Below are positions 2,496 through 35,189 of a stretch of 64,000 bases of DNA, one piece after another; position 1 is the stretch's first letter; every line of letters starts with the position of its first letter. The notes under the pieces were generated by a model that worked only from the letters and a program-made list of their open reading frames with translations, was not told the DNA's origin and did not search any database. The translations under genes were made by a program, and so were the position numbers. The DNA is from Ascidiella aspersa. Taxonomy: Eukaryota. The stretch covers positions 5,022,001 through 5,086,000 of the forward strand of contig OZ004609.1 of assembly GCA_963924565.1 (NCBI GenBank), written 5' to 3'.

Positions 2496-2775
2496 GCTAT
2501 CTGACTCATCGAAACTAAAACAAAACTGCCATTTAATTTAAGGAGCATACTGTCAGGTTTCTTATAGATTTATTGTACATTCACATAATTCAGTATAGCT
2601 TGCTTTCAATAAAATGGCTTACAGCGCAGTAAACGCGAATGCGTTGAGGATTAAAACTGGCCAGTTAACGTGCAGGGAAAGGAAAATATACCAGAACGAC
2701 CTAAACAGGCATTTAGCACACGCACAACGAACACAGTATATAACAAATACAGACGTACACCATTTCTCTCCTCCC
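2463..2775. repeat. Dispersed direct repeat, copy 1 (copy 2 at 3923-4302)
   Basis: Shared block including CATTCACATAATTCAGTATAGCTTGCTTTCAATAAAATGGCTTACAGCGCAGTAAA. Copy 1 lacks an internal stretch present in copy 2. Confidence 0.85.
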
Positions 2776-3922
2776 TGGAACACGAAAAAAGTTTCGAGCA
2801 GTTCGTTGGGGCCGCGCTTCCTTAAAATCTTCCCAGAATCCGATCACGAGTCAACGTCGGACATTCGTGCAAATACTGAAGCAGCACGTGTTGGGAATCT
2901 CGTGATGTTCAATAGAGCGAAGGGCGTTCATGAATTCCTTTTCTTGGCGGCCAACGAACAACTCCAGCCAGGGGTAGCTGATTGTGCGACACGATGGAAC
3001 AAACGTCTGAAATGGTTAAAAGGCATAATAAACAACACAATGCAAAAACACTTTTGAAAATAGCCTATATAGAAAATTATCGTCTTAAAACGCAGTTCGA
3101 ATTTCAAATGCTTACTCTAGAATACCAATTAAAAGGGGGTAAGGTGCTAAAACCTCAGAAACGCGAAAACGAATTACATCGCCTAGTCCACATTAGATGG
3201 GTGGTTGGTTCCCTAAAGCAGACATAACAATCTTGGCGCTAAAGGTTATTCTAGAAAGTTACTCACTGCCTGCTAGTAACTTAATGTGGATTACATGACG
3301 GTTATCTCACACCATCTGAAAGTTAAATGAGGCACAGCAAAGGCCTTAAAAATCATGGGTTTATAGCGAGCAATCACAAAATCTCGCGTTATGTTGGTAA
3401 TTGGCAACAAGGTTTGGCCTTCTGCTCTGTTTTCCTTCTATAATGAAACATTACGGTTAAGTGGTCAGGTTATTTTATGTGAGATATAAAACATCAATCA
3501 CCATAACACGTGACCTAAGACAATAGCCGCAATGGCTTTGACACTTTAGAAGTAACGACTTCTTTAAGTGCTGGTTGAGATATAGAATCTATCCGTTTAT
3601 TGGTTTTGAGTTCAACCTCGATCGTAATACCTTTAAAACTTTACCAAAATAGGCCATAATTTTGCAACAATAACAATAACAGTCTTGCGTAACTAACAAT
3701 TTAAAAGCGTCAAACGATTTTTCTCTGCATTACATCTAATCAAACATCAAATTAACAAGCAATAACGCTGGCATAAACTTGTCAACAAACGTTTCAACAA
3801 ATCATAACGGATCAGCGTAGCTTAAAAATAAACGAGAAACTGCGCTAGCAAACCAAATTAATTCATAATTCAGAAGGGTTTATTCGCATGTTCATATCTC
3901 AGTCGGGGTCTCCAATGTGCAT

Positions 3923-4302: not shown

Positions 4303-6794
4303 CAAAGACTCCACAAAAGCATCTAACCAAAACTTTATTATTGACACGCTTTAAAGGCTTGAAATGGCAGGACGAAATTAATTGTAGGCGAGTGAGCGGT
4401 TTTCTAAAATCAACGAATAGGCAAATTATATATACATATTTCAACACAAAACAACAAATAGCACAAATCTCACCGAAACGTTTGTGCCTGGGTCTTCAAT
4501 TAAATATGCGTCGGTACGAAGCCAAACTGTAATAATAACATGATTTATTGTTGGCACAATGAAAACAATTGCCGTAACAATGAACAATAATGACAATTCT
4601 TACAATTACTACTCACTGAGTTATGTTTACATGTACACTTACAACAGTCAAGACAACACTTACCAAAATATCAGCTTGCGTTCAAATACACAGAAAATGT
4701 AACTTCACACAGTTAGGTCAAATTTAGGTTTTAAATTACTTCTGCAAAGGTTAACAATAAAACAAGGCGACATCGTGACCGCATGAGGCGGTGTTTTTAA
4801 CCATTTAAATTACACGGAAAGGGGAAACAGTTTACAAAAATGTAGATTTGCGATGTAACAACAATGCCAATAATCCAAGGGGACTACAATCAATGAATGA
4901 CTGGGATATTTCTATTGATACGATAAATTAGTACTATTTGGATCCCACCTTAAGCACCTAAGACCATGCACACACTTAGGGCACTCTGGTGGTCTACAAT
5001 CCTACTAGGCCTACTTTTTTTTACAGTAACGAAACGAGTTGTCAAAATTTAAATTTCAAGTAAGAAACAAATCGGAATAATAAATATAATAAAATACTTA
5101 AAAAAACAGATATTGTTTGTTGTATAAACCCTCGGACTAGACCAGCGCCAAATACAGTTTTTATTGTCACCTTCTTTTGTCCACTCTTCCTTGAATATAT
5201 TCGTCGACCAGCATACATAAGCTTCTGTGCTTACGTTCTGTTTGCCAAGCAAACTGAAGAACACTCTATGCAGTCACAAACATACTTAACCAGCAAACCT
5301 AACGCAAGTAATTCTTGTTGTTTCATTTTTAGAAGCAGAATTAGACTACTAACGCAACGAGTAAGCCGAAAATGCGGAGGTCATAAGTTTACTGAAGGAA
5401 CTGCAGCATACTGGAACAGGGTTGCCAGATGCTCGGTTTAGGATTAGGACATTGTTGGTGTAAAGTTCGGACATTTTAGGACAAATAATAATTTGGCATG
5501 CACCCAGTGCAAGACTAATCGGAGCAGACAAAATTTCTTACAAATTTACTGTTAGTCGTTGATAGTAGTAGTCCAATAATTTCTTTCTGTAAAATTCGAT
5601 TTCCTTTTAGCAAAACTGCAACACTAAAATTTTATTGCGGAAATTTTGTAGATGTTTTGGAAAAGGTCATGATATCGCCGAAAAGTAGAAATACTTTGCC
5701 TGTATTTTTTAGGACTTATTGCAATTTAGACGGCACTACGATATAGGGAACTGTGTTTTTTTATTACTACGTTTATGTTGTTCTTATCTCGGTCTTATGA
5801 CTGGAGTCCGCCTGTAATCTATTGTAAACCTACCACAAATTTTTTTGTGAGTTGGTTAAAATTTAAATTTGGAACTAGAGCGCGCCCCATACTACACAGA
5901 ATTACTGCAGAAATGCGATCAAAATCGCGCGAAGCGGGAACAATTTTTGGATTTAGGTTGTAAAAGTTGGTATAAACAAAGTTCGGAGGCCTCATGCCAG
6001 CCAAATTAGGACAGAAAACTACTGTCCTAATGATTTGCAAACCGTCGGACACAGCAGGTAGAATTAGGACAATTTATCGTTTTTTTAGGCCACCAGGCAA
6101 CTGTGGTTTTAGACTGGCGTAATTACCTGTTTTGCAAGAAAAAAAACATAAGCATATCACTTGTTACACTCAAGCTGGCTTAAATTTCACGCCATGTAAA
6201 ATTACGACGCTGGAACGGATTACTTTTTAAGCCGGCTTTTACTTTATATAATCTGCCTTAGAAAGGTGCATGCATATAAACAGGCTTACTATGACTTCCT
6301 GAATCACCAATGTCTACCATGGATATAATGATCCAGACATTGGAGATGCTTGAAACATTACATGCTTGCCATAAAGTTTCACTGCCTCTCGAATTCTAGG
6401 GCGATCATCTTGCACCACTCGTTTTTTGTCGTTGGCATTCTGAGATACAATGGCTGCTGACCAGTGGTGGGGATTCAATTGTTTTGTCAGCCGGTTTTGA
6501 GTCATATTTTTCGGCAAATAAATAAATAGAGATTGAACGTATGTTACAAGAACAGAACAGGTTACTTGGATATTGCAGCCCACGCGAAAGTTGAACGCAA
6601 TCGTTTGCTGGGAAACACCGGTAGCCAAGTACCTAAAAATATGTTTTAAATAGTGTGTCTGTGCTTATTTTACATTAACGGTCATTGCCAGCCCCGTTGT
6701 TTGGTCGAAATAGATTGTCTGAAAAGGCGAGTTCTTTTTTTGAATGTGAGGACGAACCAACAAAAAATGTACTGTTTCAATTATTCTGTTTTCA

Positions 6795-7767: not shown

Positions 7768-8152
7768 GGTGACATACGAAGGTATGTTTGAAATTCCGCG
7801 GTCCTCCTCTCCAAACGCAATTCCATTATTAACCGAATATTCGCCTGTTAGGGTGATCTATTATTGTAATGTTTTTTAATATTAACATAAGCACGCCAAA
7901 AACAATCAAGTGGTATATTATTCTTGCCAAGTTCATTTCTTCTTAACCACCTCCGCCTCTGCTTTTTTCTTTTTATTACATTTCTTCTTGTTGAAACTAA
8001 GGCTACCACCTTTTAGGTTACTTGTTTGCTGAATCTTGCCATTATTATTTTAACCTTGGCTAAACTGTACTTTCTGACAGAAAAATAGCGCGCAGTTTTG
8101 CCTTGTATTATCCATAGTGACGCTCTCGAGCGCCACCTTTAAACGCGCCTTA
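7768..8152 (-). mobile_element. 5' fragment of a third Harbinger element (terminus plus nuclease N-terminus)
   Basis: Minus strand reads KKKQRRRWLRR and LIMELRLE..EFQTYLRMSP, typical of the ALP1/HARBI1 N-terminus. Terminus reads TAA|GGCGCGTTTA at ~8152. Confidence 0.55.
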
Positions 8153-18490: not shown

Positions 18491-19715
18491 TCTTCTTCTT
18501 TCGTATGGACGATCTTATTATTCCAGTTCAAATAATGTCCGGGCAGAAGTCGAGATGCCAGCGGATAGTAGTCCTCATCGTCCAAGAGTGTCAGACCATT
18601 TGTCCCACTTGGGGCGATATATCGGCACCTTGAGACTATGTGATCTGCAGTCTGTTCCTCCAACAAACCTAGCACGCCCGACCCCCCTGTTCTCAGCCTG
18701 TTAAGGCAAAAGTCTAGGCTCGAATAGGACAGGCCAAGGGGGGCTCTGCACACATACTGCGTTTCGCTTCAAGCGGCGCGTCAAGCAGTGCGTAACGACG
18801 CTTCAAACGTTCGGCTGCGTTTGGCGTGGCGCGTTCTACATAACGCGTCAGGCGACGTTCCCGGTTTGTTGTCAGCAAACAGCGTCAGTTCGCAAAAAAC
18901 TGGCAAATTTATCAGTTAGATATTTTTTTTTATTTTCTTACCATGGATGATGACGATGACGATGCGGATATGATTTGTGTGGGAAAACGCTAGTAAACTC
19001 ATCACTATTAATCACACCTAGTTGTCGGTCCTGTGCACCTCGCTTATTTTCATCCATATGTTGTTTTTCCTTAATTGGTCTTTGTAAAATTTATTTTTTG
19101 AATCGTATAGATATGGGGCATTTCGATCCATTTGGATTAATATTTCAACTCTTCACTGGTTTACCAATATAAAAAAGTTATGCTAAACCACTAATTTATA
19201 TCAGCAAACCAATATATTTCGTAAATTTATCCAATATTTAACACAAAAAATGAGCGCGTCACGCGGAAAAGTTAAACAAATTTTAACCCTGCCGTTTGAC
19301 GCGTTGAAGCGAGATCTCGACGGTTGCGTCGCGCGCGTTTTTGAGTGTGCATGCTTTGCCGCGTAACGCAGTTTGTGAGCCCTTAATATTAGGCTTATGG
19401 TGGTGGGGCATCCATTCACCTCCACCAGAGCTTTTACATTTCTGCAGTGATTTGAGTGCAGCTGGTAAAAGGAGAATCTCGAGGATAGTAGTAGTAGTGT
19501 AGTAGCCCTTTGGTATTGTGGGCTCCTCTGGGGCGAAGCTCAGCGGGCTAGGTATGTGTAGACATAGCCAAGTCATCAGCGTATGCTTGGAGAGACACTA
19601 TGGCGGGCAGATCACTGTAATAAACATTAAACAGCAAAGGAGAGCCATGGAGCCGTTGTTTGTCTTAAAACAAAGCTGCGATTATGGACAAGTTCCATGA
19701 TCATGCTGACCATGT
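18491..19715 (-). mobile_element. Vingi/Ingi-like non-LTR retrotransposon remnant (RT to 3' tail), interrupted by a MITE
   Basis: Minus strand: MIMELVHNRSFVL, PLLFNVYYSDLPAIVSLQAYADDLAM (YADD), LNRLRTG, EEQTADHIVSRC..GLTLLDDE, ending CATACGAAAGAAGAAGA with a (GAA)n tail. Confidence 0.8.
18751..19383. mobile_element. Harbinger/Tourist-like MITE
   Basis: Left CACATACTGCGTTTCGC matches the reverse complement of the right end (CACAAACTGCGTTACGC) at 15/17. Right end ...GTGAGCCCT|TAA. GC-rich subterminal inverted motifs. Outer left TIR appears deleted. Confidence 0.65.
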
Positions 19716-21779
19716 GTTTGTTAAAAATATTAATCACTGATTTTATGCTGCTGCTATGTTAAAATGACAACTCTAAAAATGGGGTAAAGTAGGGCTTTCG
19801 GGCTTTAAGAATACATTTTAAGTTACATAAAACTGGAAAATTAGTGATGCTTTTTCTCTTGCCATTATTTCTTTGTTTTTAAAGAAAAACATACAGTATC
19901 GGTTAGGGGTAGTCCCGGATTTTAGTGTGATAACTAGGGTAATACTAAAAGTGTAGGCGACTAAAATGCTTAAACACATATTTTTAAAGACTGGTTTGAT
20001 AACTTTAGGCACAGCATATTCACCATGTATAAAAAATATTTTTTAGTTTAGCAGTAGTAAGCAATGTTAACATATAATTTGGAAAAAAATGTTATGTTAA
20101 ATATATATTTTATAAAGGCGCGCTTTTTTGGTGCCTAATCTTTTTTGCCAATTAAACTGAATTTTTTTCTTCTCAAGTATGGAATATCGAAAACGTCGGA
20201 TACGTTTGACTGCCCCTAAGTTTATGTTTTCTAATCAAGTTCTTTACCCTGATTCGGCTCCCCAACAAATAGAACCCCCAGATCAAAATCTAAACTTGTG
20301 CATTGAAAAAAGTGGTTTTCGATCCGATCAGTGAGATTGCCCTAACTTGAAAAATGAAGTATAGGATACTTGCATTTTTATAGTGAAATAAACTGTAAAT
20401 TTGGTTTATTGTTATTATCTTACTTTGTATGATTTTAGTGGTTTCAGTTATACCAGAAAGCCAGGCTCACTATGGAAGAGATTTCAAAATCAACAGCAAC
20501 TACTTTAAAATTGCATTATTTTTAAAAATATGGTTGGTTATATTACAAGTTATGGGTATAGCTGTTTGTAATAAAGTATTATTAACATACACCAGTTAAA
20601 TAAATCTATGGTGGCTACTTCGGCCTTCTCTCCAATGAAGTATGCTTGTCGTACTGTTTTATTAGGATGCTTTGTTGTGTTTAGATTGTTCCAAGAATAG
20701 AGTTCATTGGGATGCAAAATGTTATATACCCCTATATTATTAAAGAAACAGAAGGCTTCAAGTTATTACCCGTAAACTATGACAATAAACAACTAAAAAA
20801 TCGATGTTCGATTTTCATTATCAAAAGTATTCTTATTTCCACAATTTCAGGTAAGAAATGATATTTTTGTTTAATATGAGTTGAACATTAAGGACTGTAG
20901 CCATTAATATTTTTCCCAATTTTTTTATTATGCCTTTTGATGAACCAAATTATTTGACTACTACTAATGCAAGGTAATAGAAATTAAATGAACTAAAGCA
21001 TAGATAGTAATAAAAATGTGTTTTGAGGTTGGTAATGAGGACCAAAGTGAATTTTTAATGCATTGCAGAACTTAGGTCAAGTGACATTTGGAAAAATAAG
21101 TATTTAACATGTGGCTAAAAGAGAAAGAGAGGTTGAACTATTTTAATATAATAGATTTTCTTTTAATAAATTTAAAAATAATGCTTTACTTTAGCGATGT
21201 GTACCTCTATCGAGCTGATGGACTGAAAATATTAATTAGAAGAACCAACAATGCCACATAAGACTTCGTACAGATAAATCACTATTCTCCACAACGAATT
21301 TCTTCCTGAAGAAAAACAACAAAGGTAACTGAATAAAAATGATGGTATATTTTTTTACTTACTGTCTGTTTGTTCTTTTAAACGGGTACGAGGAAAAAAA
21401 TCTCAGGTTTAGCTTTACCTCTGGTACTATATAATTCTGTAGACTTGATGTTGTCAGCAAGATTGCTTCACCTCATGAAAATTTAGCTGAAAATTCTCTT
21501 TGACTTGGCTCCGCATCGGGAAGATCCAACTAATGACAAGCCAAAATCCAAAACTATCAAAAAAACCATTGTAGACCAATAAGCAGAAATAAAAAATTTA
21601 AAAGAAGTAGAGGAAAATCTTGCTACAATTATGACGCTGGGATAAGAATTTCCCGCAGTGATGCATCTCTTAAAAAAGACAATTCCAAAACAACTCCCAC
21701 AAATATATAAAAGAACTTGCAACCTAAGTCATAATAAGCTTCCCCGGAAACATCCCAAACCAAATCAGTTTTCTTCAAG

Positions 21780-22400
21780 ATAAAATGTTTTGTTATCCCA
21801 TGACCACAGCTTTCGTGCTGGATGGCTACATGATAACTCAGTTTATGCCACAGCAACATCCTTTATGTGTCATCAATGGTTGCCCAAGTTGTACAACAAA
21901 AAGGCTCTATCAAGCGATTATGGTCTAAACACATGTCTCACTGACAAGAAGTGGTTATTCGTGCCGCGGAACCCAAGTGGTCGTCATTGGATATATTACT
22001 TGCCGTCAATATTGATAAGCGACTTCTTTTGTACCTGGATCCTGTACAAATATAATGGTTTGCACCCAAACTAGTATGAGTGTTATACTTTTGTAAATTA
22101 CCTCATGACTAAAAAGTTTGGATTTCCCCTTACATCTGTTGAAAGCTATGCTCGGACTCTACAGTCAGACTAAGATAGTTGTATGTATGCGAAATGGCTT
22201 TCCTCAAACAAAAGTCGTGTTGTGTACATTCTGGATCAGTATTTGAATATCGCCGCAAGTATATGATTCTGTCGTGGGGGCGGCATGTCTTGGGAAGACC
22301 CTAAAAAAGTTCATTGGGTCCACAGTGGTTCCACAGCACATGTGTAGGGATGACAAAAGAACAAGCAGCAAATGAAAAGCACTTTCTATGTCAAAACAGC
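21780..22400 (+). pseudogene. Ulp1/C48 (SUMO-type) cysteine protease followed by a PHD finger
   Basis: AGWLHDN; KWLFVPRNPSGRHWI-(fs)-LLAVNIDKRLLLYLDP (His and Asp region); TLQSD*DSC (Gln/Cys region); QWFHSTCVGMTKEQAANEKHFLCQN. Confidence 0.78.
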
Positions 22401-22839
22401 TTTTCTTTAGAAAAAGACAATCTTTGCCTTCTACTGACTGTCCTTTACCTCTTAATTATTTTTATATTGATTAAACAAAATTACTGTAATCAATTTAATG
22501 TTATTCAATTATTATTTATTGAACTATCTTCCAAATGAAATATTTCTCTGTTTTTAATTTTTTTATGTATATAGATCACTTTTATTCTGTAGTTAAACTA
22601 ATTACATATCTATTGAGCAAATCAATTTATGTTTAATTTTATTCATTGTCAATCAAATCATTATTTAAGCAAGCAATCATTTATATTGAAATGAAATGAA
22701 TTATTTGGTTTTTCCTTTATTATCAAATTTTCTCTTCTACCTTTATTCTGTGTCTGCAATCTACACACAGCATCATTTGATTTCTACATCTGCACCCATC
22801 TTAACAACCCATGACTGCAATAATGAAAAATACACATGC

Positions 22840-23491
22840 TGTGACGTCCAAAATTTTAGGACGGTCACGCATAGGCTTACAAGTTAGCAAACCTAGGCTT
22901 TTGCCTTTGTCGTAGGTGACGTCATCGGGCACGATGAGTCAGAAATTCACAACTGTCCTCTAACTGCACAAACTGTGGTTTTCAGTGTTATATTATGGCG
23001 ATGAAGGTGAAAGAACGGTGCACGAATTCGGCAACGGATAAACAAATACAGTATCCAAAGAGGGTTCATTCCAAATCATGACATTGAAAGGCGTTTACAT
23101 CATACAGAACATGTTGGGATTATACAGTAGAGGACACATTCAGATTTCTGAAGTTCACAGTACCTAGGTGTTTAGCATTACGGTGTTGGTTTAATCGTCT
23201 AAACATTTAAAGAATAACAACAAACAAAATGTTACCAAAACACTTTACATAACTAGACATTCACTAAATTGCAATTATCTTACATTAACGAGCATATAAA
23301 CAACTAAACTTAGCCGATTCCAACAGATAACTGCCATACGAAGACTGCAACAGAAAGTGAACAAAGACTGCACTAAAAAGGGGTGCGAAAACAAAGCCGA
23401 AATACACAAAGGAATCATACCGTAACGCATGGTTGCACTTGACAGAGAAGCATAGAAAACTTATATAAATATTGTTATTTTGTCCGTAACA
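22840..23491 (-). repeat. 3' LTR of BEL element (652 bp)
   Basis: Direct repeat of 28234-28866. Confidence 0.96.
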
Positions 23492-24302
23492 TTCCGGCCC
23501 CAAAAATGTCAGAAAGCATGGAGAACATTTTTCAAAACAAAGGCGGACAAAAGAACAATAATGGTACACAAACACAAATGTTTTGTTTGACAGAAACAGC
23601 TGGGAAGCCAAAATTCGATTACAAGTTTCTCAATAAAACTAACAATGAACATTGCAATCTTGGACTGAAAAAGAAACAAGGGCACAAATGTTATACAACA
23701 AGACACTGACAGGAGTTTCATAAAATGCACAGTTCAAATGCTTCATATCAAACTACAAATTTGCACCAATATTTGTTCTAGGAGGTAAACAGCAATGACA
23801 AGTTTAGGCAAAGCAATTTGAAGATGACAAAATGGCATGTAAAGGCTAGAATAAAGCACGTTCAAAATAAATGAAAACATACATTAGGACCACCAAAAAT
23901 TAAGAAAATTAGGAGGTAAAGGTAAGCATAAAGGACTAGTAAGAAACCATTTTCACAATACTTGAAAATCACATTTTAAGAAACACAATGAGTAAATTGA
24001 AATGTTGATAGAAACACACAGTAGGCTATCTTAAGCAACTCCATAATACTTGATAATGAACATTCAGGCAACACAATGGGTAGTGGGCAACAATATGAAG
24101 TATGAAAGGTATTCGGAATGTTGGCATTTAAAAAATAACACAACTTCACAACACAGGCATGTAAAGTAAAAAGTACGGCAAGATGAAGGTTCACATAGGT
24201 AGCAACAGGTTTGCAAAAATGACATATGTAGAGGGATGTGATAAAGAAATAAAAAGAATGAGCAGCTTACAAATAGAAACAGCATGCAACGAAAGTAAAA
24301 AC

Positions 24303-25049
24303 TTAACCACGTTCCAGCAAGCACAGCCTTCGAATGTCCCTCCTCAAGGTTAAGCCATGTGTTCGGACTCGAACCCTCCGTACAACTCCATCCTGATCAG
24401 GAATGACCTGCTTAACCCGTCCTATGGGCCATGCTCTTCTCTTTGTGTTAGTATTGATTACTAACACAACATCTCCGACTTTGAAGTTGTTCATCGGTTC
24501 CAACCACCTTTTTTGCAAAAGTGGCAAATATTCCTTTAACCAGCTTTTCCAAAACTGGTCACTAAGCCATCGTACTGCACGCCAGAATTTCTTGTCATCA
24601 TCTGTCTTGTGTACTTCCTTTCTTTCATGTAACTCGTGGTTAGCTTGAATGAAGTTTCTTTTGTTGGTGAACTTGGGTTTAATGGTAGACCATCTTCTGA
24701 GCAGAAATGTCAGAGCGTCACTACCACCTGGTTCCGTAAAAACCTCAGATTTGCCAGAATGCTTGGCAGTCCTGTCAAACCCAATCGCAAACTTGCGATT
24801 AATGCAACGGCGAGCTTTCTTCGCTTGTGGCTTTCCCCAACCAAGTACTTTCCTTGGTTTTCCCATTTCTAGGTGATGACTGGTCTTCTCAATGTACTTC
24901 TGAAACAGCGACCAACCCATATCGAATCGCCTCTGTTTACCAAGAGGGTGTTTTTTCGCTTTTCCACAATACAAAGACAGCTTGTCATCCTTACCTTCAC
25001 ATGGTAACGCAAGCTGTTTGTCTTCCTTTTTTACAGTTGATTTCATCAT
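24303..25049 (-). pseudogene. BEL pol remnant: pre-RT spacer fused to the integrase C-terminal (DUF5641-like) domain
   Basis: KKFWRAVRWLSDQFWKSWLKEYLPLLQKRW..FKVGDVVLV..WPIGRVKQVIPDQDGVVRRVRVRT..RRDIRRLCLLE. No YxDD, RNase H or DDE motifs upstream. Confidence 0.88.
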
Positions 25050-25143
25050 AGTGATTTCTCAACGGACGTAGAAATGCCGTTTGGGCACATGTCATCTGTG
25101 GTAAACCGTTTACCACAGCTGTCCTCTGGCGCATCAGTGCCAA

Positions 25144-26700
25144 CTAGGGTCCATCCAAGACCAGTTTGAATGGCTGTTGGCTGACTTGGTTTTCCATACC
25201 GCATTTCCCGAATGGAATGGGCTTCTTGTGCACCGGCCCCAATGAGAATGAATACCCACTTCTGCTTTGGGCAACTTTTGAAAGGTAAGTCCCCTTAGGT
25301 GCGAATGACGCTGCACATCTTCCATTGTAGGTAGGTATACTCTCCTTTAGTTTAGGTAGACTATTCACAGTAAAGGCATCCTCAATATGGATTGAATCGG
25401 TCTCCTGAATCCCTTTCAGAGACAACCCAACCTCATATCCTTGCAGATCCCTACTGCCACTTATGCCAGCGAGTCTTCTGGTAACTTGTTTTCCTTCTAG
25501 CTGAAGTCTTTGCTTTAGACCCAATGTACAGAAAGTAGTGTCCGAACCCTCATCCAGTAATGCGTATGTCTCCACTACTTGATTCGGGTCGTTTCCCCAC
25601 ACTTGGACTGGTACCACCTTGAGTCTAACTCTGTTCCTACCAACATTGGGTGTAGTCACAGCAAGATATGAATGACATTCTTCTGTAGGACTGTCAGATT
25701 CCTCCTTTACCTCAGTTGGCGTAAAGGTTTTTTCTTCTCTTTGTTGTTCATCATTATGTAGAAGGGTATGATGTGATTTTCCACAGGATTTACATTTTGT
25801 TGAGCAGACACATTTATCTGCTTTGTGGCCTCGAGAAAGGCAGTTGAAGCATAAGTTGTTAATTTTAACCGCAGTCCAGCGGTCAAGCTGTTCCTTATTC
25901 TGGAACTCATCACACACCCATAACGGATGCGGTTTGGCGCAAACCACACAGGGTGGAGGATCCTTCTTCCTAGACCGCTCTGGAGGTCTAGATTTTTCAG
26001 CATGGACTCGTTTTGGTGACCTTGGATTGGTTTGTGTTGAAAACACAAGATGTTTGCTCTTCTGTGGCTCGTCCTTTGTTTCCCTATCTTCAACGGAAGT
26101 CAACGAATCACCGAAAATGTTGTTAGACTCTTTGACCTTTTTGGAAATGTATGCAGTTAGGTCGCCGAATGTCACACTGCCAGTCTTCTGGTAAAGCGAA
26201 CTGGCTTTAGAAGCAAATTTATACTGCATGTACTCGGGCAATCGTTGAAATATTTGAACTAAGAATTGGGGGTAGTCTAACTGAGACTCACAGCCCAAAG
26301 ATTGGAAAATCATAAGAGCATTTGTCATGCGCGAGGCTAGTGAACGAAGACCGTCTTTGTCTCCGACCTTGATTGCAGGACCATTCGTCAGTTCTTTAAC
26401 ATGTGCATTTACAACTAAATCTGTGCGCCCAAAGTTATCCTTTAATAACTCACGAGCAGTAGCCAGACCCAATTCGGATGGGCTCTGGGCACAACACCCA
26501 CTGACAACGTCATATGCCTTTCCTTGGCACATGTCCACCAAGTACTGAAGTTGTACAGCAGGATCAGGAAAATGCTTTGTGATAGTCTCATCAAATCGCT
26601 TCATAAAGTTGTGGTATTGCATTGGATCCCCAAAGAACTTTGGTAGCTCTCTTTTGGGCAAAGTAAATCCATGCAGCATGGTTTTAGTACTCTTCACCAA
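25144..26700 (-). CDS. BEL Gag (DUF1759-like capsid, three Cys-His knuckles) plus aspartic protease
   Basis: LPKRELPKFFGDPMQYHNF; CVVCAKPHPLWVC, CFNCLSRGHKADKC, CKSCGKSHHTLLH; YALLDEGSDTTF. Frameshifted near the C-terminus. Confidence 0.92.
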   Translation of the reverse strand: MVKSTKTMLHGFTLPKRELPKFFGDPMQYHNFMKRFDETITKHFPDPAVQLQYLVDMCQGKAYDVVSGCCAQSPSELGLATARELLKDNFGRTDLVVNAHVKELTNGPAIKVGDKDGLRSLASRMTNALMIFQSLGCESQLDYPQFLVQIFQRLPEYMQYKFASKASSLYQKTGSVTFGDLTAYISKKVKESNNIFGDSLTSVEDRETKDEPQKSKHLVFSTQTNPRSPKRVHAEKSRPPERSRKKDPPPCVVCAKPHPLWVCDEFQNKEQLDRWTAVKINNLCFNCLSRGHKADKCVCSTKCKSCGKSHHTLLHNDEQQREEKTFTPTEVKEESDSPTEECHSYLAVTTPNVGRNRVRLKVVPVQVWGNDPNQVVETYALLDEGSDTTFCTLGLKQRLQLEGKQVTRRLAGISGSRDLQGYEVGLSLKGIQETDSIHIEDAFTVNSLPKLKESIPTYNGRCAASFAPKGTYLSKVAQSRSGYSFSLGPVHKKPIPFGKCGMENQVSQQPFKLVLDGP

Positions 26701-28181
26701 TCCACAATGGCCTTTCCATAGTGAATGTCATCTTTGGCGAAGCTCTCGTGTGAGAGAGAAGGTTTGTGGCAGGAGGCCGGCCCCATTGAAGGACTGAAAG
26801 CCCCCTGCATCGTGTCAGTTTGTTGGCACATAGGTTGCGCCTGTGAAGGTACAGGCAAGATTGGATTGGCAGATACATTTTTTGGTGATTTTTGATGGGC
26901 AACAGGGTACTTAGGCTGCGGTACAATTGCTGATTCTGGCAGCAACAAGGGGATGAAAGCAGGAGTGGTCTGCCTTTCACCAGGCATCATATAGTCCATC
27001 GGGGCCAGGTCACGGGCAGCCTGCTGTAAGTGAGCAGAACTTCCCATCCTGGAAGCATCTATCTGATTTAGTGGGGACAGATTCAACCTGTATTCATGAC
27101 TAGAATCACAGGATCCCACCGGTTCAGCCTCGAATGCGACCAGGTCAACCTCATGCCTCTTACGCTGCATCTTGAACTGTGCTTTGCAAGATTTTTTCCG
27201 ATGAACCAATTTTGCCTTGGCCAACATTGCCTCAGCCCTTTCCTCTTCCCTTTTCCTTCGGGATGCTGCCTGCTCCATTTTCATTTTGAGCACTTTCACC
27301 TTAGCATTTGCATCTTCCTCCTGCCTTCTTCTTGCCTCTTCTTCTCGTATTTTGCGAGCATATTCTTCCTCTTCTCGTCTTCTTCTGGCCTCTTCTTCAC
27401 GTCCTTTGCGGGCAAGTTCTTCCTCTTCTTGCCTTCTTTTGGCCTCTTCTTCCCGTCCTTTGCGGGCAACTTCTGCCTTTTCTTCTTCAAGCATAACTCT
27501 CAGTGCCTCCTCCTCTTCCTTGGCCTTACGTTTAATTTCTTCAGCTATCCTCTTCGCTTCATTAACCTCATCAGCTGATACCTGAAGTGCTAATTGTGCC
27601 TCCGTCTCGGCCTGCTTGCTTTGCAGATGAGCAAGGTGCAGCTCCTTTACTGAGCGTCTGCTGCTTCTGCTAGACCTTGAAAAGGAGCCAAAGAATTTCA
27701 CACTAGATCCCTTAGAACGACGTGAGTGATGGGAAGACCTAGAGCTTGCCCTTTCGGAATAAGATGATTTACAGGATTTTCGACTAATCTTGGCCGTGGC
27801 ATCTTGTATAAATGCCTGATACTTATCATTAATGTTGTCCCTGCTTTCTTCCAGGGACTCTATCTTGTCCAACGCTTCCTGCTGTTGGGTGGGCAGTGAT
27901 AATGGGATTGCAATATGGTATTCTCTGCAGCAATTTAGGCATTTTGTCAAGGCACTGTTGAAGGTTTCCTTTGCATTCAGTACTTCCTTGAGATTGGCAA
28001 CATCTAGCATTAAGTGACATAAAATATTTTTTGCTCTGGTAACAGCACCCAGCAGCCCACTTCGTGATGATTTTAAAGAACGTAACCTTTCACTTAGTAC
28101 CCCCTCTACATCTTCGTTGGAGGATATACTAGAATTTGATCCAGGCATTTTGCTTACAACACCATAAATGCTACACAACAA
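26694..28181 (-). CDS. BEL Gag N-terminal region (Ser/Arg-rich plus E/R/K charged helical repeats)
   Basis: 495-aa ORF directly after the 5' LTR, overlapping the next ORF via a one-base frameshift. Repeated ARKGREEEA(K/R)RR units. Confidence 0.85.
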   Translation of the reverse strand: MLCSIYGVVSKMPGSNSSISSNEDVEGVLSERLRSLKSSRSGLLGAVTRAKNILCHLMLDVANLKEVLNAKETFNSALTKCLNCCREYHIAIPLSLPTQQQEALDKIESLEESRDNINDKYQAFIQDATAKISRKSCKSSYSERASSRSSHHSRRSKGSSVKFFGSFSRSSRSSRRSVKELHLAHLQSKQAETEAQLALQVSADEVNEAKRIAEEIKRKAKEEEEALRVMLEEEKAEVARKGREEEAKRRQEEEELARKGREEEARRRREEEEYARKIREEEARRRQEEDANAKVKVLKMKMEQAASRRKREEERAEAMLAKAKLVHRKKSCKAQFKMQRKRHEVDLVAFEAEPVGSCDSSHEYRLNLSPLNQIDASRMGSSAHLQQAARDLAPMDYMMPGERQTTPAFIPLLLPESAIVPQPKYPVAHQKSPKNVSANPILPVPSQAQPMCQQTDTMQGAFSPSMGPASCHKPSLSHESFAKDDIHYGKAIVDW

Positions 28182-28233
28182 GTTTCAGACACCTTGTTTC
28201 TTGGTAACAGGAGTCTGGTTTCTTCAGAAATTA

Positions 28234-28866
28234 TGTGACGTCCAAAATTTTAGGACGGTCACGCATAGGCTTACAAGTTAGCAAACCTAGGCTTTTGCCT
28301 TTGTCGTAGGTGACGTCATCGGGCACGATGAGTCAGAAATTCACAACTGTCCTCTAACTGCACAAACTGTGGTTTTCAGTGTTATATTATGGCGATGAAG
28401 GTGAAAGAACGGTGCACGAATTCGGCAACGGATAAACAAATACAGTTCGTATCCAAAGAGGGTTCATTCCAAATCATGACATTGAAAGGCGTTTACATCA
28501 TACAGAACATGTTGGGATTATACAGTAGAGGACACATTGAGATTTCTGAAGTTCACAGTACCTAGGTGTTTAGCATTACGGTGTTGGTTTAATCGTCTAA
28601 ACATTTAAAGAATAACAACAAACAAAATGTTACCAAAACACTTTACATAACTAGACATTCACTAAATTGCAATTATCTTACATTAACGAGCATATAAACA
28701 ACTAAACTTAGCCGATTCCAACAGATAACTGCCATACGAAGACTGCACTAAAAAGGGGTGCGAAAACAAAGCCGAAATACACAAAGGAATCATACCGTAA
28801 CGCATGGTTGCACTTGACAGAGAAGCATAGAAAACTTATATAAATATTGTTATTTTGTCCGTAACA
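28234..28866 (-). repeat. 5' LTR of BEL element (633 bp)
   Basis: Differs from the 3' LTR by a 4-bp insertion, a 23-bp deletion and one substitution that I can see. Confidence 0.96.
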
Positions 28867-31800
28867 CATGCCTGTGTGGACTTCTCAGTATTGCAACAAT
28901 TTAAAACTTCCACCATATTCTTTCAAGCCAGCCCTCATTAAGACGTTCATCATCCTAATAACTGCACAATTAATTTAACATCAACATATTTCGGAATCAC
29001 TGATTCGAAACAGCATTGTTTTAAAATTTCAATCAACGTTTTGAAAAACAGATATTAACAACTCTCCAATATAGTAAGTTACCACTTAGTTGTTTGTAAA
29101 AATGTTACACATTAACAAATATTTTACTATAAAACATTTTGGAAATATTACGCAGCTCGAGACTACAGCTTAGTTCCTCCTTGTTGTGAAATAGAAACAC
29201 ATTTAATGAAGACTTATTTTATTGAAATGCATGGAAACTATTAACAATGTAAGTCACATGTATTTCACAAGTTTGAATTTGGGTGTATATCATTTTCCAG
29301 GCAATTGATGTTTAAAAAGGTTTAGGTTCTAGTTAAATGCCTGTATTGAATATACAATAAGATATTTATTTGATTGTCTTAGACCTGCCCATTTTAGTGA
29401 AGAGTATTTCTTTCACTTTATTCCAAGCTTAGTCAGCTGTATTTTTAAGGAAGCCACTCAAAGCAATGTAAGAAACTTTTGTTTGATTTATCTAACTAAT
29501 ACTATACAGAACAACGTAAGTTGACTGGTAGTCTAAACATTTGTTTCTAATGAATTTACTATGTAGTATATAATAAATTTTGTTCATAATTATTAATTTT
29601 TCGATATTTCCCTTTTTATATGTTTTTTAAATTAACCTTTGCGAGGATCCAAATTATTATATAAATTGCATGTTTTATTAAGCTGTTTAGTTATTGCTTG
29701 TTTATTGCTACCAAAACAAAAAGAACTTTCAAAAAATTGCATGTTTGCTTTTTATTAAGAGCTGTTTAGAACTATCAAAAAAAGTACATGTATTTCGTTG
29801 TTGTAAGTTATTGCTAAAAATTTTGTGTTGTTAGTGTTTAGTTCTATGTTCTTGATTATAAAATTGTCCATAATTCACTTTATCTTTTTTATGTTTATGC
29901 TTTCTGTTTAAATTTTTGTTTGCATGCGGCTGGGAAAGGAGATGACAACCTTCACGTGGTCTTCCCTGTGATATGTTTTAATTTTTTGTCAGGTGTTAAT
30001 TGTTTATTCGTTTATCTTCTTGAATAAAATATGTCCCGAGCACATTTAGTACTAGACCAAATAAATAAGATGTTTGATTTTTAGTTTTAATTTAAGCATT
30101 GTATGAATTAGTCGCCTACACTTTTAGCTAGATACTTTTAAACGTCCATTGTGAGGTTCCAAATCCAAGAATTATTGGAACGCTTCCTATTGGCTGAAAT
30201 TTTATGACGTCACAGACGGTCAGCTGAGCGGCTGTAGTAAGCGGGATTTTAACTTAAACGGTATCGATTAGGACACGCCGTGAATAATTTGCTTAAGGGC
30301 AGGTTTGTTGTCATCGATTAATACAAAAGCCTGCTTAAATACGTTTTTTCCTTTACAAAAATTGTTTTTTTAATCCAGTAGACGTTATAACTACCGTACT
30401 CAATAAATTCTCTTGTGCTTTTACAAACATTTTTTTACTCTGTCGCCCAAGTGTTTGCAATCTTTGCATAGATCAACTAAACACATACGAGCTAACTTAA
30501 AAAAAATTTACCTAAATTTGCCAACCTTAATCAAAATTCTCCATAAATAAGGTTTATACTTCAAAAATTCGACATCGTGTTGCAAACACTGCTATTTTCA
30601 TAATATACAAACGTAAAAGATTATTTTATTCTTCCCAAAGATATTGATTTCATTTAATGTCTTTTTGCAAATATTTTGCTAGAAGACAACAAAATGTGTT
30701 TAAACTAAAAAAACAAACACACATATTAATATAAAAATGTACACAACACATAACATTTTATAGCATTGGCACGTTTTTTAAAATAAGAAACTGAATTTAA
30801 CCAATTATTTCATGACAGAGATACGTAGGTAAAATTCTTGAGCTCCTCTTTAATCTTGTTTGCAAAATGTCATCTGATAATTCAAGCTCCATTCAGAATA
30901 AAAATCTGGTTGACAACTATGTTGAAACATCTCACAAGGTACGTTTGGTAATACTACAAAATATGTTCCTCTTTAAAAGCTGACATTCTTTTATTCAGTG
31001 GTTTTCTTCTGTTGAGGAAGGCTTGGTTGCAGTTAAAGTCTTTGAAAAAAAAAGATATACAATTTTGTATTAGTTGCAGCAAAACGTGTGGTAAATCTAT
31101 GTGAAATAACTGTCAAATTACATATGCCTTGTTTAGATCTTACTTACCAAAAGTAACATTTATTGGACTCCAACTGGAACACCGTATAAGATTCTCCATA
31201 CAAAATATATGTTAGTATTTGTCAGTTTAAAGAGACATTGGTTATTATCACAAAAAAATATTTTTTTTATTATAGTTCAAAGACTGTGAAGGATCAACAA
31301 AATACTGATGGCAAATCTAAAGACATTAAACTATTAGGCCCATAAAACATTCATATATCATGACAACATAATTGCAAGGGAATTTTATTAATTACAAATC
31401 TTGTTAATAGGTGTCCAATGCTTCCAGACATCAGCAAAAAAAATGTCACAAAAAAAATCATAGGAAGATAAAAGTGTCCAAAAGGTTGTAGGGTGCATTG
31501 TGTATTTTCCCCATATCAACAAGGTAAAAATTTGTATGAAAACCAGGACAAGGTAGTTGTTATGAAAATCATCCACATTTTGCACCTAAATATAACATAT
31601 CAATACTAATATAACTTTGAAACCTGAAAACGATAGTCTAACGAAGGGTGTATTTATAGTATTATATAAGTTTGTGCAGCAACCCAAAAGTAGCTTGGTT
31701 GTAAGTTTGGGATAAGCGACTAGGAAAATCAGAGTGATAGGGTTTGCAAAAATTATTTCTCTCCTAAAAAATGAAAGAATAGTGACAATCTTACCAGGTA

Positions 31801-32019
31801 ATGACGTTAGATTTTCAATAGCACACACACAAAATCTTGATATTTGATGGCAAAATATAAAGATCTGCAACAAACAAAGATTTTAGTTTTCAGCTTCAGA
31901 ATAGTTCAGTAAAAGCCTAAAAATAGTGACTTGATTAGAATGACAGGTCTGTAAGATAAATAACAATTTAATATTTTAGAAAATACCATATAAAAATTTT
32001 GACATAATTATTATTTTTT

Positions 32020-34480
32020 AGGTTTGGAAAAAAACAGAATTAGATGGGATGAAACCAACACGCCCCGCCCTACATAATTTGCAAGGCAAAGATAGGCATA
32101 AGGATTATAACATAAAACGGACTCGACATGTGAGTGCTTTTCACTAGATATGTTTGAAATCAATGTTTTTGCATAGCTGTTACAAATATTTTTGTAATAT
32201 TTACCAAGATGTTAGAGAACACGATGTTAGTCAGAAAAAAATGATGATTCAGGGGTCCAAAAAAATGGGCTGTCAGGCAACTATCAAATTATGGGAAGTT
32301 TATAAATTTCCAGAACACAAAGTGAGTACAAAGTAGATTTTTGGAGTTTTGGATATTTGTGCAAAAAGTTTTATGTTACAAATATTTTTGTAATATTTAC
32401 CAAGATGTTAGAGAACACGATGTTAGTCAGAAAAAAATGATGATTCAGGGGTCCAAAAAAATGGGCTGTCAGGCAACTATCAAATTATGGGAAGTTTATA
32501 AATTTCCAGAACACAAAGTGAGTACAAAGTAGATTTTTGGAGTTTTGGATATTTGTGCAAAAAGTTTTATTTTACATTTTTTAAGACAACAACTGCTAAT
32601 GCTAAAACAAGAGCTTCAGGTGTTAATAAACTGTTTGCCTGTGGGGTAATATTTCCAATTGAAAACGATCATTCAGGACATGTTATTGGAGAGGTAAAAA
32701 TACACTTGTTAACAATCTATTGCTACAACTTTAACCCATAAAAAAATAAAAAAAACTTAAGAGCCACAAAAATCAACATTTAGTGCTTCAGCCAATTGAC
32801 TGTCGATTAATCGAAAAAATCAATGAAATGGTGGAGGACGGAATTTGTCGCATTCCAGAAATAAAACGTGGATTGGCATCGTTTGTCATACATGAAATGT
32901 TCAAGAATCAGACACCCCCAAGTTTTGACAACAGGCGTTTTTTCCCACAAAGAGAGAGATATCCGAAACCATTATTATCAGGCTTATGCTAAAGCGCAAG
33001 CTTAGCCGCATTGACCAATCAAACATGAAGGCAATCATTGAAAGTTGGCGGTCATCCTCTGCAAAGGATGATGAAATATTCTTTCGACCTTACGTTGCAG
33101 GATAAATCGCGATTTTTTTAATCACAATTTTTTATTTTTTTAATATAATATATAAACATTCCACTTTTTAAAAGCAAAATCAATAACATAACAAAAAGTA
33201 AAAAGAAAACTTACAATTAAAGGTGTTGGTCAGTGTGTGTGCATGGAGAAGAAGATGAAGTTGACGACAACAATGCCCCTGTCATCAACTGTGAACAAAC
33301 TCTTTTGTTTGATCAGTTTGCTTGGCAGAGGAGGCTTCTCCAGCGCTACGGGCAAAACATATGTTTGCTTGACGCAACATATAAGACAACGAAGTACGTT
33401 TTTCTTTGTGTCAAAACAAATGTTGGCTGACGCTCTTTCCACCCTCAAAAAATGGTCAGAGTTGGAACCCCACACACACTGTTTATGACCGACAAAGTGA
33501 CGCAGAGATTAATGCAATAGAGCGAGTTTTTCCAAGTAAGTGTAGAGTATGTGATTAACCCTGTGCAGTAACAAACGTTATTAAAAAAACAAACGAACCA
33601 AAAATTAAATTGCTTGTATTTTTACATTTATAGAATGTCGCGTTTTGATTTGCGACTTTCATCGTGAGCAAGCATGGGAGCGTTGGTCTAAGAAATCTGA
33701 TAATATGGTTGCTAACCAGCGTCCGGAAGCCCTTGCTCTCATGAGAGAAGTTGCGAAAGCTGACAGTGAAGGATGATGGTTGGCTGCAGCTTTATACGAT
33801 TTACAAAATAGCGACATTTGGAAAAACAATGAGATTTCAAAAATATTTTACTAATGTTTGGCTTACAGAGAAAGAAGTGAGTAAATAAAGGAGTATGATT
33901 AATTGTTGGAAATGGTTTAACATTTTTTTGTTTTCTTGAGCAGATAGCCGGCAAAACAGGGTGCTGAAGGAGTGTCACATGCGGTTTCGCACTGACAAGT
34001 CGCGCTCTCCAGTTTAGTGACTGTTTTGCATAAAGAATTTTTACCAGAAACTTTAGAAAGGTGATATATTTTGATTTGGTGTATGCAAATTGTTATGTAG
34101 AATGTTATTTTGTGGCTCTAGCATGGTTAACACATTAAAATAAAACATTACAAAACTTTTTAATCTTAAAGGTATAAACAAGAAAACCTGTTGGCATCTG
34201 ACAACTACCGCCGGTACAGTGAAGACGTTCTAGCCTTTTTACACAATCGGCCACGTAAATTTGAGCAGAAAAAAGTGTAGAGAGAAAAGCAGTGTACAAC
34301 GTTTTTCTTGGTACTCAGGACACTTTTCCTTCTTGTAGCTGTCCGGATTATCGGTGTCATTTTCTGCCATGCAAGCATATATGTTCGCGGTGTTTAAACT
34401 GCAGCGAAATATCTTGGAAGAATTTACCTCAGTGGATAAAGATGCTGCTGAATTACCTGAAAAATGTAGGGTGATAAATC
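32020..34480 (+). pseudogene. Mutator/MULE transposase with CaRF-like N-terminus and SWIM zinc finger; spliced, decayed
   Basis: IQGSKKMGCQATIKL; HSGH; QPIDCRLIEKI..NRRFFP; WQRRLLQRYGQNICLLDATYKTTKY..LCVKTNVG; ICDFHREQAWERW; PSCSCPDYRCHFLPCKHI. Confidence 0.85.
32178..32569. repeat. Perfect tandem duplication, 196-bp unit x2
   Basis: TGTTACAAATATTTTTG...AAAAGTTTTA starts at 32178 and 32374. Duplicates one exon with its splice donor. Confidence 0.95.
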
Positions 34481-35189
34481 CTGACATGATCAGGAGCAGC
34501 TCAGAGAAAGTGGTATTTTGAGATTCCCAAGCTCACAGACTTTACAGGACTATCGGTATGTTTAGGGAGTCGTATTTTTTTCAACAGTGTTGTGACCAAA
34601 TCTTTAAAAAAGGTGAATTTATCTTATTATGTTTTAGAAATGTTTACCAAACAGCACCAGGTTTACAAAATCATGTGCTGAAAGAGAATTGGCAGATCAT
34701 GAAAGGTATTTTGGCAGTTGAGAATATTTCAATAACACACAGTATGGGGTAATTTGAATAGAATTGTTAAAAACCCTTGATATTATTTTTTATTAAAAAA
34801 ACACAAATCAACTAGTGCGAAGCACAATAAAATAACATGGAAAAGTAGCGATTCACTTATTGGGGTGTTGTCGTATAATTCATTCACTCACAAAACATGG
34901 TTGGAAAATATTCTACCATATTCTATTCCACCTTTACACACTGGCTGTCGGTTGCCTAACATGTTCTGTGTACTAAAACCTAAATTATTAAGTAGTTGAA
35001 TATTTTTATATTACAGTAAAATAAAATATTGTGTACAAATGCCTCTTCTGCGCGAAGCATTGTCAGCGCTTATTCTAGGCCTGTTTTATGAGAACGTACA
35101 AACAACGTCAAAGCTTGGTTAGTATGTTTTGGGAAGTGGTTGAATCACTTCTCAAATGCAATTTTACAGTAGTTTACAGTATGCAGATG

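What the first reader, a model, noticed from the sequence alone, without database searches (positions are those of the whole stretch)
19945..30127. Hidden TIR element pairing a Ulp1 protease-PHD gene with a convergent tandem death-domain-like gene
Seen: a 20-bp perfect inverted repeat 10.2 kb apart. Excising the BEL at its CATGC TSD leaves a ~4.2-kb unit with a plus-strand Ulp1/C48 protease and PHD finger, and a minus-strand relic that reads through the insertion point like two death domains (..ISKMFY/YWRVV..FKTLIEIL.. then LMRAGLKE..VF/SLLQSWVVKMGA..NDAVCRL). Known: Ulp1 and PHD cargo occurs in Zisupton, Ginger1 and Rehavkus-type MULEs. I do not know death domains as standard DNA-transposon cargo. 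Inference: a mobile cassette combining deSUMOylation, chromatin reading and a possible decoy of apoptosis/innate-immune signalling, i.e. a candidate anti-silencing module. The death-domain reading needs several frameshift corrections, and no transposase is visible inside the TIRs.
Basis: partly seen in the sequence, partly recalled or inferred. Interest (0 to 1): 0.8.

Follow-up and report, generated by a model that had tools for sequence, protein, structure and literature searches.

The report
Dead Mutator-like transposon, no death-domain gene
The inverted repeats are the ends of a decayed Mutator-like DNA transposon with a young BEL/Pao retrotransposon nested in it. Its Ulp1-PHD relic is the broken tail of the transposase, and the "death-domain gene" is non-coding AT-rich DNA, so the locus is ordinary.

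Summary
The sequence facts hold, but the interesting interpretation does not.

**Confirmed:**
- A perfect 20-bp inverted repeat sits at 19945-19964 and 30108-30127.
- A BEL/Pao LTR element at 22840-28866 has a CATGC target duplication.
- Ulp1 and PHD relics lie on the plus strand.

**What it is:** The unit is a decayed, internally deleted copy of a Mutator-like (MULE, Rehavkus-like) family.
- Two near-identical relatives of about 8.9 kb on C7 and C4 have 65-bp TIRs and 9-bp TSDs.
- They encode CARF-like and MULE DDE domains in upstream reading frames.
- SWIM, Ulp1 and PHD lie in one open 627-codon frame, so Ulp1-PHD is the transposase C-terminus and not separate cargo.
- The window copy has lost the DDE part and carries stops, frameshifts and half a PHD.
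- It also lacks the outer 7 nt of its right TIR and has no TSD.

**Death-domain reading: no support.**
- There is no Pfam, PDB or genome-wide Death-profile hit here.
- The minus strand is no more open than shuffled sequence.
- The pieces have no paralogue in the genome, and no family copy has such an ORF.
- Part of the stretch is conserved non-coding 3' sequence of the family.

First-stage notes elsewhere in this genome had already flagged MULE-Ulp1-PHD fusions. Low interest.

The parts
19938..19985 (+). Left TIR of the decayed MULE copy (GGTAATACTAAAAGTGTAGGCGACTAA...).
   Evidence: Homology to the C8:23483870 and C1:23174251 copies starts at 19937/19938 (alignment). All family TIRs start with GGTA.
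19938..20955 (+). 5' region of the element, with a non-coding stretch and a first-exon relic. The deletion breakpoint relative to the C8 copy is near 20955.
   Evidence: Matches the C8 copy in three pieces: 74% (19937-20255), 85% (20247-20906), 96% (20906-20955). Window 20336-20565 matches reference positions 463-698.
21036..21248 (+). Small remnant just downstream of the MULE-domain exon (reference positions about 3318-3552). The rest of the DDE region is deleted.
   Evidence: 68% identity, E 9e-14, to the C7 and C4 copies. No Pfam hit on its own.
21520..22400 (+). Pseudogene of the transposase C-terminus: linker, Ulp1 (Peptidase_C48) and the second half of the PHD finger. It carries stops and frameshifts, and the stretch with the first four PHD cysteines is missing.
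   Evidence: tblastn against the intact 627-aa family ORF gives E 7e-8, 2e-27 and 1e-26 in different frames. PHD hit E 0.0026.
22401..22839 (+). 3' non-coding region of the MULE, left of the BEL insertion.
   Evidence: Blocks 22441-22497, 22686-22747 and 22744-22820 are collinear with other family copies. No Pfam hit.
22840..28866 (-). Nested BEL/Pao LTR retrotransposon, internally deleted. It has gag and the integrase C-terminus, and no RT domain was found. LTRs are 22840-23491 and 28234-28866. The CATGC TSD is at 22835-22839 and 28867-28871.
28872..30090 (+). 3' non-coding region of the MULE, right of the BEL insertion. Blocks 29403-29477 and 29879-29969 are shared with the family.
   Evidence: No hits.
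30091..30127 (-). Right TIR, lacking the outer 7 nt. It is 97% identical to the C8 and C1 left ends.
30129..34488 (+). Neighbouring element, not part of the unit: a second MULE-type element ('MULE-B'). It has a high-copy TIR of about 100 bp and a decayed transposase at 32783-34435.
19401..19936 (+). Neighbouring element, not part of the unit: a high-copy TIR repeat whose terminus faces the left end of the MULE.
   Evidence: at least 195 candidates. Most alignments end at 19925, some at 19935. Inverted pairs occur elsewhere in the genome.

Best explanation
The stretch 19938-30127 is one old, dead copy of a Mutator-like (MULE, Rehavkus-like) cut-and-paste DNA transposon. A much younger, internally deleted BEL/Pao LTR retrotransposon later inserted into its 3' non-coding region.

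Autonomous relatives in the same genome move by a DDE transposase and make 9-bp target duplications. Their upstream reading frames encode CARF-like (ALS2CR8) and MULE/RNaseH-like DDE domains. One 627-codon frame then encodes a SWIM finger, a Ulp1 (C48) protease with an intact H-D-Q-C set, and a C-terminal PHD finger.

The window copy has:
- lost about 2.3 kb holding the DNA-binding and DDE parts;
- kept only a frameshifted Ulp1 and half of the PHD as a relic;
- lost the outer 7 nt of its right TIR;
- no recognisable TSD.

It therefore cannot move by itself, and probably not in trans either (inferred). The minus strand between the PHD relic and the right TIR is the family's AT-rich 3' non-coding region and not a gene.
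For: **Intact relatives**
- C7:10980006-10988913 and C4:30956558-30965919 are 99.93% identical over 8.7 kb. They have 65-bp TIRs and 9-bp TSDs (TGAATGCAC, AACTCAAAT).
- A third copy, C7:14203814-14209769, has 56-bp TIRs and the TSD GGATACTTA.
- Pfam on the reference ORFs gives ALS2CR8, ZSWIM1-3_RNaseH-like and MULE in one ORF. It gives SWIM (residues 78-102), Peptidase_C48 (447-549) and PHD (578-620) in one 627-aa ORF.
- The reference has minisatellites (periods 23, 82, 93) between the PHD and the 3' TIR.

**The window copy belongs to this family**
- It is collinear with the reference: 463-698, 4329-4390, 4624-4677, 4971-5669 and 8005-8090 appear in order and in the same orientation.
- The C8 copy has the same TIR and continues into reference positions 1174-2224, which the window lacks.
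- Protein-level decay is shown.

**The BEL insertion is young**
- The LTRs differ by 1 mismatch in about 630 bp.

**Negatives for a Death domain**
Against: - This copy has no TSD: the 9 bp on the left are GATAACTAG and on the right CTAGATACT.
- The right TIR is 7 nt short.
- The right subterminal region is much shorter than in the reference. The conserved block lies 158 bp from the end here, against about 820 bp in the reference.
- Window 28872-29400 has no counterpart in any copy I hold.
- Single-insertion origin therefore rests on collinearity alone.
- DDE-domain phylogeny against curated Rehavkus and MuDR sequences was not done.
Confidence: 0.85

Rival explanations
1. The two arms are ends of two different MULE fragments that lie in inverted orientation in a transposon-rich stretch. 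On this view they are not the two ends of one insertion.
For: - There is no TSD, and the right TIR is truncated.
- Both arms directly abut the termini of other TIR elements.
- The 20-mer also occurs as solo ends at the C1 and C8 sites.
- The right subterminal region is far shorter than in the reference.
Against: - Left, middle and right homology blocks are in the same order and orientation as in the 8.9-kb reference.
- The right arm has the orientation expected for a right end.
Confidence: 0.11
2. Pack-MULE-like capture: the unique 28872-29400 segment is a captured host gene fragment, possibly of death-fold type, read on the minus strand.
For: - The segment has no homologue in the other family copies.
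- MULEs are known to capture host gene fragments (PMC6446971 abstract).
- The genome has at least 26 Death-profile matches elsewhere.
Against: - No parent locus appears at the DNA level or the protein level.
- The pieces give no Pfam hit at E up to 10 and no PDB hit.
- The genome-wide Death profile search reports nothing in this region.
- The path needs at least 6 breaks in 173 codons, against 7.0 +/- 1.4 for shuffles. The longest open run is 37 codons, against 48.5 +/- 12.
Confidence: 0.03
3. One reading: a mobile cassette pairing a deSUMOylase/PHD gene with a convergent death-domain decoy that acts as an anti-silencing module.
For: Only the presence of Ulp1/PHD relics and helix-like strings on the minus strand.
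Against: - Ulp1-PHD is part of the transposase ORF in intact copies.
- Both putative genes here are broken.
- No family copy examined has the minus-strand ORF.
Confidence: 0.01

Closest known systems
Rehavkus group of Mutator-like elements (Repbase; summarised in Dupeyron et al. 2019, PMC6446971)
   Same: - 9-bp TSD.
- TIRs within the 26-400 bp range.
- PHD finger in the transposase.
- Minisatellites just before the 3' TIR.
All four were seen in the intact relatives.
   Different: - This family also carries a SWIM finger and a Ulp1 protease. The table in that paper does not list either for Rehavkus.
- The host organism is coded, so I cannot say whether it falls within the reported arthropod/annelid range.
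- DDE phylogeny was not done.
- The window copy itself lacks the DDE domain, the minisatellites and the TSD.
Ulp1-carrying MULEs: plant KI-MULEs and other plant MULEs, and MuDR-type elements of Hydra and lancelet (cited in Bao et al. 2010, PMC2836005)
   Same: - A Peptidase_C48 domain is associated with a Mutator transposase.
- That paper's Figure 1e aligns Ulp1 and PHD domains of Mutator transposases.
   Different: I did not compare sequences with those elements. Relatedness beyond domain content is untested.
Ginger1-9_HM (Ulp1 plus PHD at the transposase C-terminus; PMC2836005)
   Same: The same C-terminal Ulp1-PHD add-on.
   Different: - Ginger has a Gypsy-integrase-like DDE.
- Here the DDE is a MULE domain (PF10551) with a SWIM finger and 9-bp TSDs.
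Pack-MULEs
   Same: A MULE TIR-bounded unit without a transposase that holds a segment not shared with the family.
   Different: No parent gene and no coding signal for that segment.
BEL/Pao LTR retrotransposons (for the nested element)
   Same: - TG...CA LTRs and a 5-bp TSD.
- DUF1759 and DUF5641 domains, which I recognise as BEL/Pao gag and integrase C-terminus.
   Different: It is internally deleted. No protease, RT or RNase H domain was found in the three ORFs scanned.

Membership tests
Mutator/MULE superfamily | MULE DDE transposase domain (PF10551) | tested here: met
   Met in the intact relative: MULE E 6e-10 and ZSWIM1-3_RNaseH-like E 2e-12. NOT present in the window copy, where it is deleted.
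Mutator/MULE superfamily | TSD of 9 bp (8-11 bp range) | tested here: met
   Three relatives have perfect 9-bp TSDs. The window copy has none.
Mutator/MULE superfamily | Terminal inverted repeats, often long | tested here: met
   65-bp and 56-bp TIRs in the relatives. In the window the match is about 37 bp with an indel, and the right arm is 7 nt short.
Rehavkus group | PHD finger in the transposase | tested here: met
   PHD E 2.5e-7 at residues 578-620 of the 627-aa ORF. The window keeps only half of it.
Rehavkus group | Minisatellite before the 3' TIR | tested here: met
   Arrays with periods 23, 82 and 93 in the reference. The window copy has none.
Rehavkus group | DDE domain clusters with Repbase Rehavkus transposases | not testable with these tools
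Ulp1 / Peptidase_C48 | Profile match and catalytic His-Asp-Gln-Cys set | tested here: met
   The reference scores Peptidase_C48 at E 1.3e-10. Its sequence shows GRHW...(17 residues)...LDP and Q..DSC (read). In the window His and Asp lie in different frames, a stop sits just before the Cys motif, and 5 residues are deleted there. The window pieces give no Pfam hit.
Death domain (PF00531) | Profile or sequence match to a death-fold domain of about 80-90 residues | tested here: not met
   - Six minus-strand pieces give no Pfam hit at E up to 10.
- The PF00531 six-frame scan of the genome gives 26 matches, none at C3:5041945-5052127.
- PDB phmmer on three pieces gives no death-fold chain.
Death domain (PF00531) | Six-helix-bundle fold | not tested
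   The reading needs at least 6 breaks and crosses the BEL junction. It has no single reference and was not typed in, and the pieces are too short to fold meaningfully.
Pack-MULE | Captured fragment with an identifiable parent gene | tested here: not met
   Only self matches at the DNA and protein levels.
BEL/Pao LTR retrotransposon (nested element) | LTRs with a TSD, and BEL/Pao-type gag and integrase C-terminal domains | tested here: met
   DUF1759 E 6e-10 and DUF5641 E 3e-24. LTRs and the CATGC TSD are shown. Assigning these two Pfam families to BEL/Pao is from my own knowledge.

The most novel reading that the evidence does not exclude
MULE-type elements of this genome may integrate preferentially at the very termini of resident MULE-type TIRs, giving end-to-end nesting.
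- The window copy has both ends abutting the outer termini of two other TIR families, within 1 bp on the right and 11 bp or less on the left.
- An independent family member on C7 sits exactly in the first 9 bp of another copy of the right-hand neighbour, with a clean 9-bp TSD.

The alternative is simply chance in a transposon-dense region, or later rearrangement.
Probability: 0.2. Interest if true: 0.4.

Novelty: new member of a known kind. Interest (0 to 1): 0.13.

Why it matters
This result removes a false lead: there is no death-domain cargo and no immune-decoy cassette in a DNA transposon here.

What remains is routine annotation of a dead non-autonomous MULE with a nested BEL element.

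The mildly useful by-product is the family itself. It is a recently active MULE with SWIM, Ulp1 and PHD in one transposase reading frame, Rehavkus-like minisatellites and clean 9-bp TSDs. That makes it a good natural system for asking what a SUMO-type protease and a histone reader do for a transposase. First-stage notes on other pieces of this genome already point to the same fusion.

Tried and rejected
- **Left terminus at about 19908.** I first placed it there from a MAFFT alignment to the reference TIR. I rejected this because 19401-19925/19936 belongs to a different high-copy TIR repeat. Homology to sister copies starts at 19937/19938.
- **Split TIR.** I looked for the missing outer part of the right TIR beyond the neighbouring element. 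No copy exists in the window or in the held loci, so this stays untestable.
- **Shared duplication.** I considered that the right arm plus its neighbour is a duplicate of the C7:14209769 junction. I rejected this because the neighbour is 97% identical at the junction while the TIRs belong to clearly different subfamilies.
- **Continuation of the right neighbour on the left flank.** None was found.
- **Conserved 70-bp block as an RNA gene.** There is no Rfam hit and the fold z-score is +0.5.
- **Minus-strand ORFs in the reference's 3' region.** They derive from minisatellites and give only sub-threshold chance hits.
- **RNA evidence.** No RNA run holds the stretch.
- **Joined protein across the BEL junction.** A read-through with frameshift corrections was not searched or folded, because it has no reference and I did not type it in. 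The large protein searches were not spent, because Pfam settled the domains.
Full report
**Observation**

The 20-bp inverted repeat is real: 19945-19964 and 30108-30127 are 100% complementary. When the two arms are aligned with two other genomic copies of the same terminal sequence (C8:23483851-23483870 and C1:23174232-23174251), the match extends to about 37 bp. The left arm carries a 7-bp deletion in that stretch. The 20-mer has 4 exact and 4 near matches (2 mismatches or fewer) in the 308-Mb genome, while its reversed control has none.

The LTR element at 22840-28866 is also real.
- Its LTRs (652 and 633 bp) differ by one mismatch and two indels.
- They run TG...CA and are flanked by CATGC on both sides.
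- Its minus-strand ORFs hit DUF1759 and DUF5641 and nothing else, so it is internally deleted. I recognise these two families as BEL/Pao gag and integrase C-terminus.

**What the unit is**

A search of the window's own genome with the two halves of the unit returned many loci. They share short conserved blocks in the same order.

Two of these loci are 99.93% identical over 8.7 kb: C7:10980006-10988913 and C4:30956558-30965919.
- Both end in 65-bp terminal inverted repeats (GGTAGGCACTTTATGCC...).
- Both are flanked by perfect 9-bp target duplications, TGAATGCAC and AACTCAAAT.
- A third copy, C7:14203814-14209769, has 56-bp TIRs and the TSD GGATACTTA.

Pfam scans of the reference copy's open frames give the following:
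- ALS2CR8 (CARF-like), ZSWIM1-3 RNaseH-like and MULE transposase domains in one frame;
- SWIM (residues 78-102), Peptidase_C48 (447-549) and PHD (578-620) in one uninterrupted 627-codon frame.

The Ulp1 part shows the His...(17 residues)...Asp and Gln...Cys spacing expected of an active C48 protease (sequence read). Minisatellites with periods 23, 82 and 93 lie between the PHD finger and the 3' TIR.

[quoted passage not shown] Ulp1 domains, some with PHD, are already reported in Mutator and Ginger1 transposases (PMC2836005).

**The window copy**

The window copy is collinear with the reference:

| Reference positions | Window positions |
|---|---|
| 463-698 | 20336-20565 |
| 4329-4390 | 21535-21599 |
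| 4624-4677 | 21728-21781 |
| 4971-5669 | 21787-22400 |
| 8005-8090 | 29879-29969 |

A weaker match joins reference positions of about 3318-3552 to 21036-21248. The part of the reference that holds the DNA-binding and DDE domains, roughly 1000-3300, is missing. A sister copy on C8 has the same TIR, matches 19937-20955 in three pieces at 74-96%, and continues from there into reference positions 1174-2224. The window copy therefore has a deletion with a breakpoint near 20955.

At the protein level, 21520-22400 matches residues 171-622 of the intact ORF, with E values down to 2e-27. The match needs several frames and shows clear damage:
- it contains in-frame stops;
- a stop sits just before the catalytic Cys motif, and 5 residues are deleted there;
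- the stretch holding the first four cysteines of the PHD finger is missing.

So "no transposase inside the TIRs" is correct, and the explanation is an internal deletion. The Ulp1-PHD "gene" is the broken C-terminus of the transposase and not a cargo gene.

**Termini**

Homology to the C8 and C1 copies begins at 19937/19938, at GGTAATACTAAAAG. Every family TIR I could read also starts with GGTA.

The right arm stops at 30127/30128 and lacks those outer 7 nt. No TSD is present: the 9 bp on the left are GATAACTAG and on the right CTAGATACT.

Both ends abut other transposons.
- **Right side.** From 30129 runs a different MULE-type element. Its first 100 bp or so are a high-copy TIR, with at least 112 candidates and many inverted pairs. 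It carries a decayed transposase at 32783-34435.
- **Left side.** Window 19401-19925/19936 is another high-copy TIR repeat, with at least 195 candidates, whose terminus faces the element.

That the two arms belong to one insertion therefore rests on collinearity and not on a TSD. I give the two-fragment alternative about 0.11.

**The death-domain reading**

The quoted strings are present on the minus strand. Dinucleotide shuffles of the same stretch need 7.0 +/- 1.4 breaks, and 36% of them do as well or better. The longest open run is 37 codons, against 48.5 +/- 12 in shuffles.

The direct tests were all negative.
- Six stop-free pieces give no Pfam hit at E up to 10.
- Three pieces give no death-fold chain in the PDB.
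- A six-frame scan of the whole genome with PF00531 finds 26 matches, none in this region.
- Two pieces searched as proteins against the genome find only themselves.
- The DNA has no parent locus.

Blocks 22686-22747, 22744-22820, 29403-29477 and 29879-29969 are collinear conserved non-coding blocks shared with other family copies. Part of the "second death domain" is therefore family 3' non-coding sequence.

The reference copy has no minus-strand ORF there apart from minisatellite read-throughs, and these give only chance hits.

Window 28872-29400 is unique to this copy. A Pack-MULE-like capture cannot be strictly excluded, but it has no positive evidence (about 0.03). I did not search or fold a joined, frame-corrected protein, because it has no reference and I did not type it in.

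**How it works**

- **The family (shown from domains, TIRs and TSDs; mechanism inferred from the superfamily).** Transposition is cut-and-paste by a MULE DDE transposase that makes 9-bp staggered cuts. The near-identity of the C7 and C4 copies and their open frames argue for recent activity.
- **The Ulp1 and PHD domains.** Their role is unknown. Published suggestions are involvement in transposition or in ubiquitin/SUMO-linked repair (PMC2836005).
- **The window copy.** It is inert. It has no DDE domain, its C-terminus is broken and one TIR is truncated.
- **Order of events.** The MULE decayed first. The BEL element then inserted recently into its 3' region, as its LTRs are nearly identical.

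**Verdict**

This is an ordinary nested-transposon locus. The family is a new member of a known kind. First-stage notes on other pieces of the same genome (s1-790954, s1-790918) already flag MULE-Ulp1-PHD fusions, which agrees with what I found independently.

Noticed in passing
window 30129-34488: A second, different MULE-type element. Its first 100 bp or so are a high-copy TIR, with at least 112 candidates and many inverted pairs 0.4-5.4 kb apart, which suggests MITE-like derivatives. It has a decayed transposase at 32783-34435 (42-54% aa identity to the reference MULE transposase, with stops). No right TIR is present in the window.
   Followed up: partly
window 30127-30131; L044:3815-9770 (C7:14203814-14209769): Two independent cases of a MULE-A-type element lying end to end with the left terminus of the 30129 element family. 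In the C7 case the insertion sits exactly in the first 9 bp of that element's TIR, with a clean TSD (GGATACTTA). This may be a preference for inserting at TIR termini.
   Followed up: partly
window 19401-19936: A high-copy TIR repeat with at least 195 candidates. Inverted pairs elsewhere (for example C1:16951824/16953358 and C7:24145080/24145942) suggest TIRs of about 165-190 bp. Its terminus faces the left end of the studied element, with 11 bp or less between them.
   Followed up: partly
window 29900-29969 (also L022-L035 around position 1501-1590): A block of about 70 bp, TTTGCATGC..GGGRAAGGAGATGACAACCTTCACGTGGTCTTCCCTG, is 83-90% identical in at least 14 family copies whose flanks do not align. 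It is better conserved than the coding part. It contains an octamer-like TTTGCAT and an E-box CACGTG. There is no Rfam match and no unusual fold, so it may be a cis-element such as a promoter or a transposase-binding site.
   Followed up: partly
L038:5007-5110 (C7:10980006-10980109): At one end of the reference element the TIR is followed at once by its own partial inverted copy (CACATAGAATACTTATATTTTTAAGTATTCTATGTGTCAC). This gives a foldback hairpin at the terminus.
   Followed up: no
window 26694-28181 (minus strand): The BEL element carries a 495-codon ORF upstream of gag with no Pfam hit. It contains a 54-bp x3 tandem repeat that encodes a charged E/R/K-rich coiled-coil-like stretch.
   Followed up: no
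L039:4801-5244 (C4:30956800-30957243): The C4 copy of the otherwise 99.93% identical reference element has about 440 extra bp near one end compared with the C7 copy.
   Followed up: no
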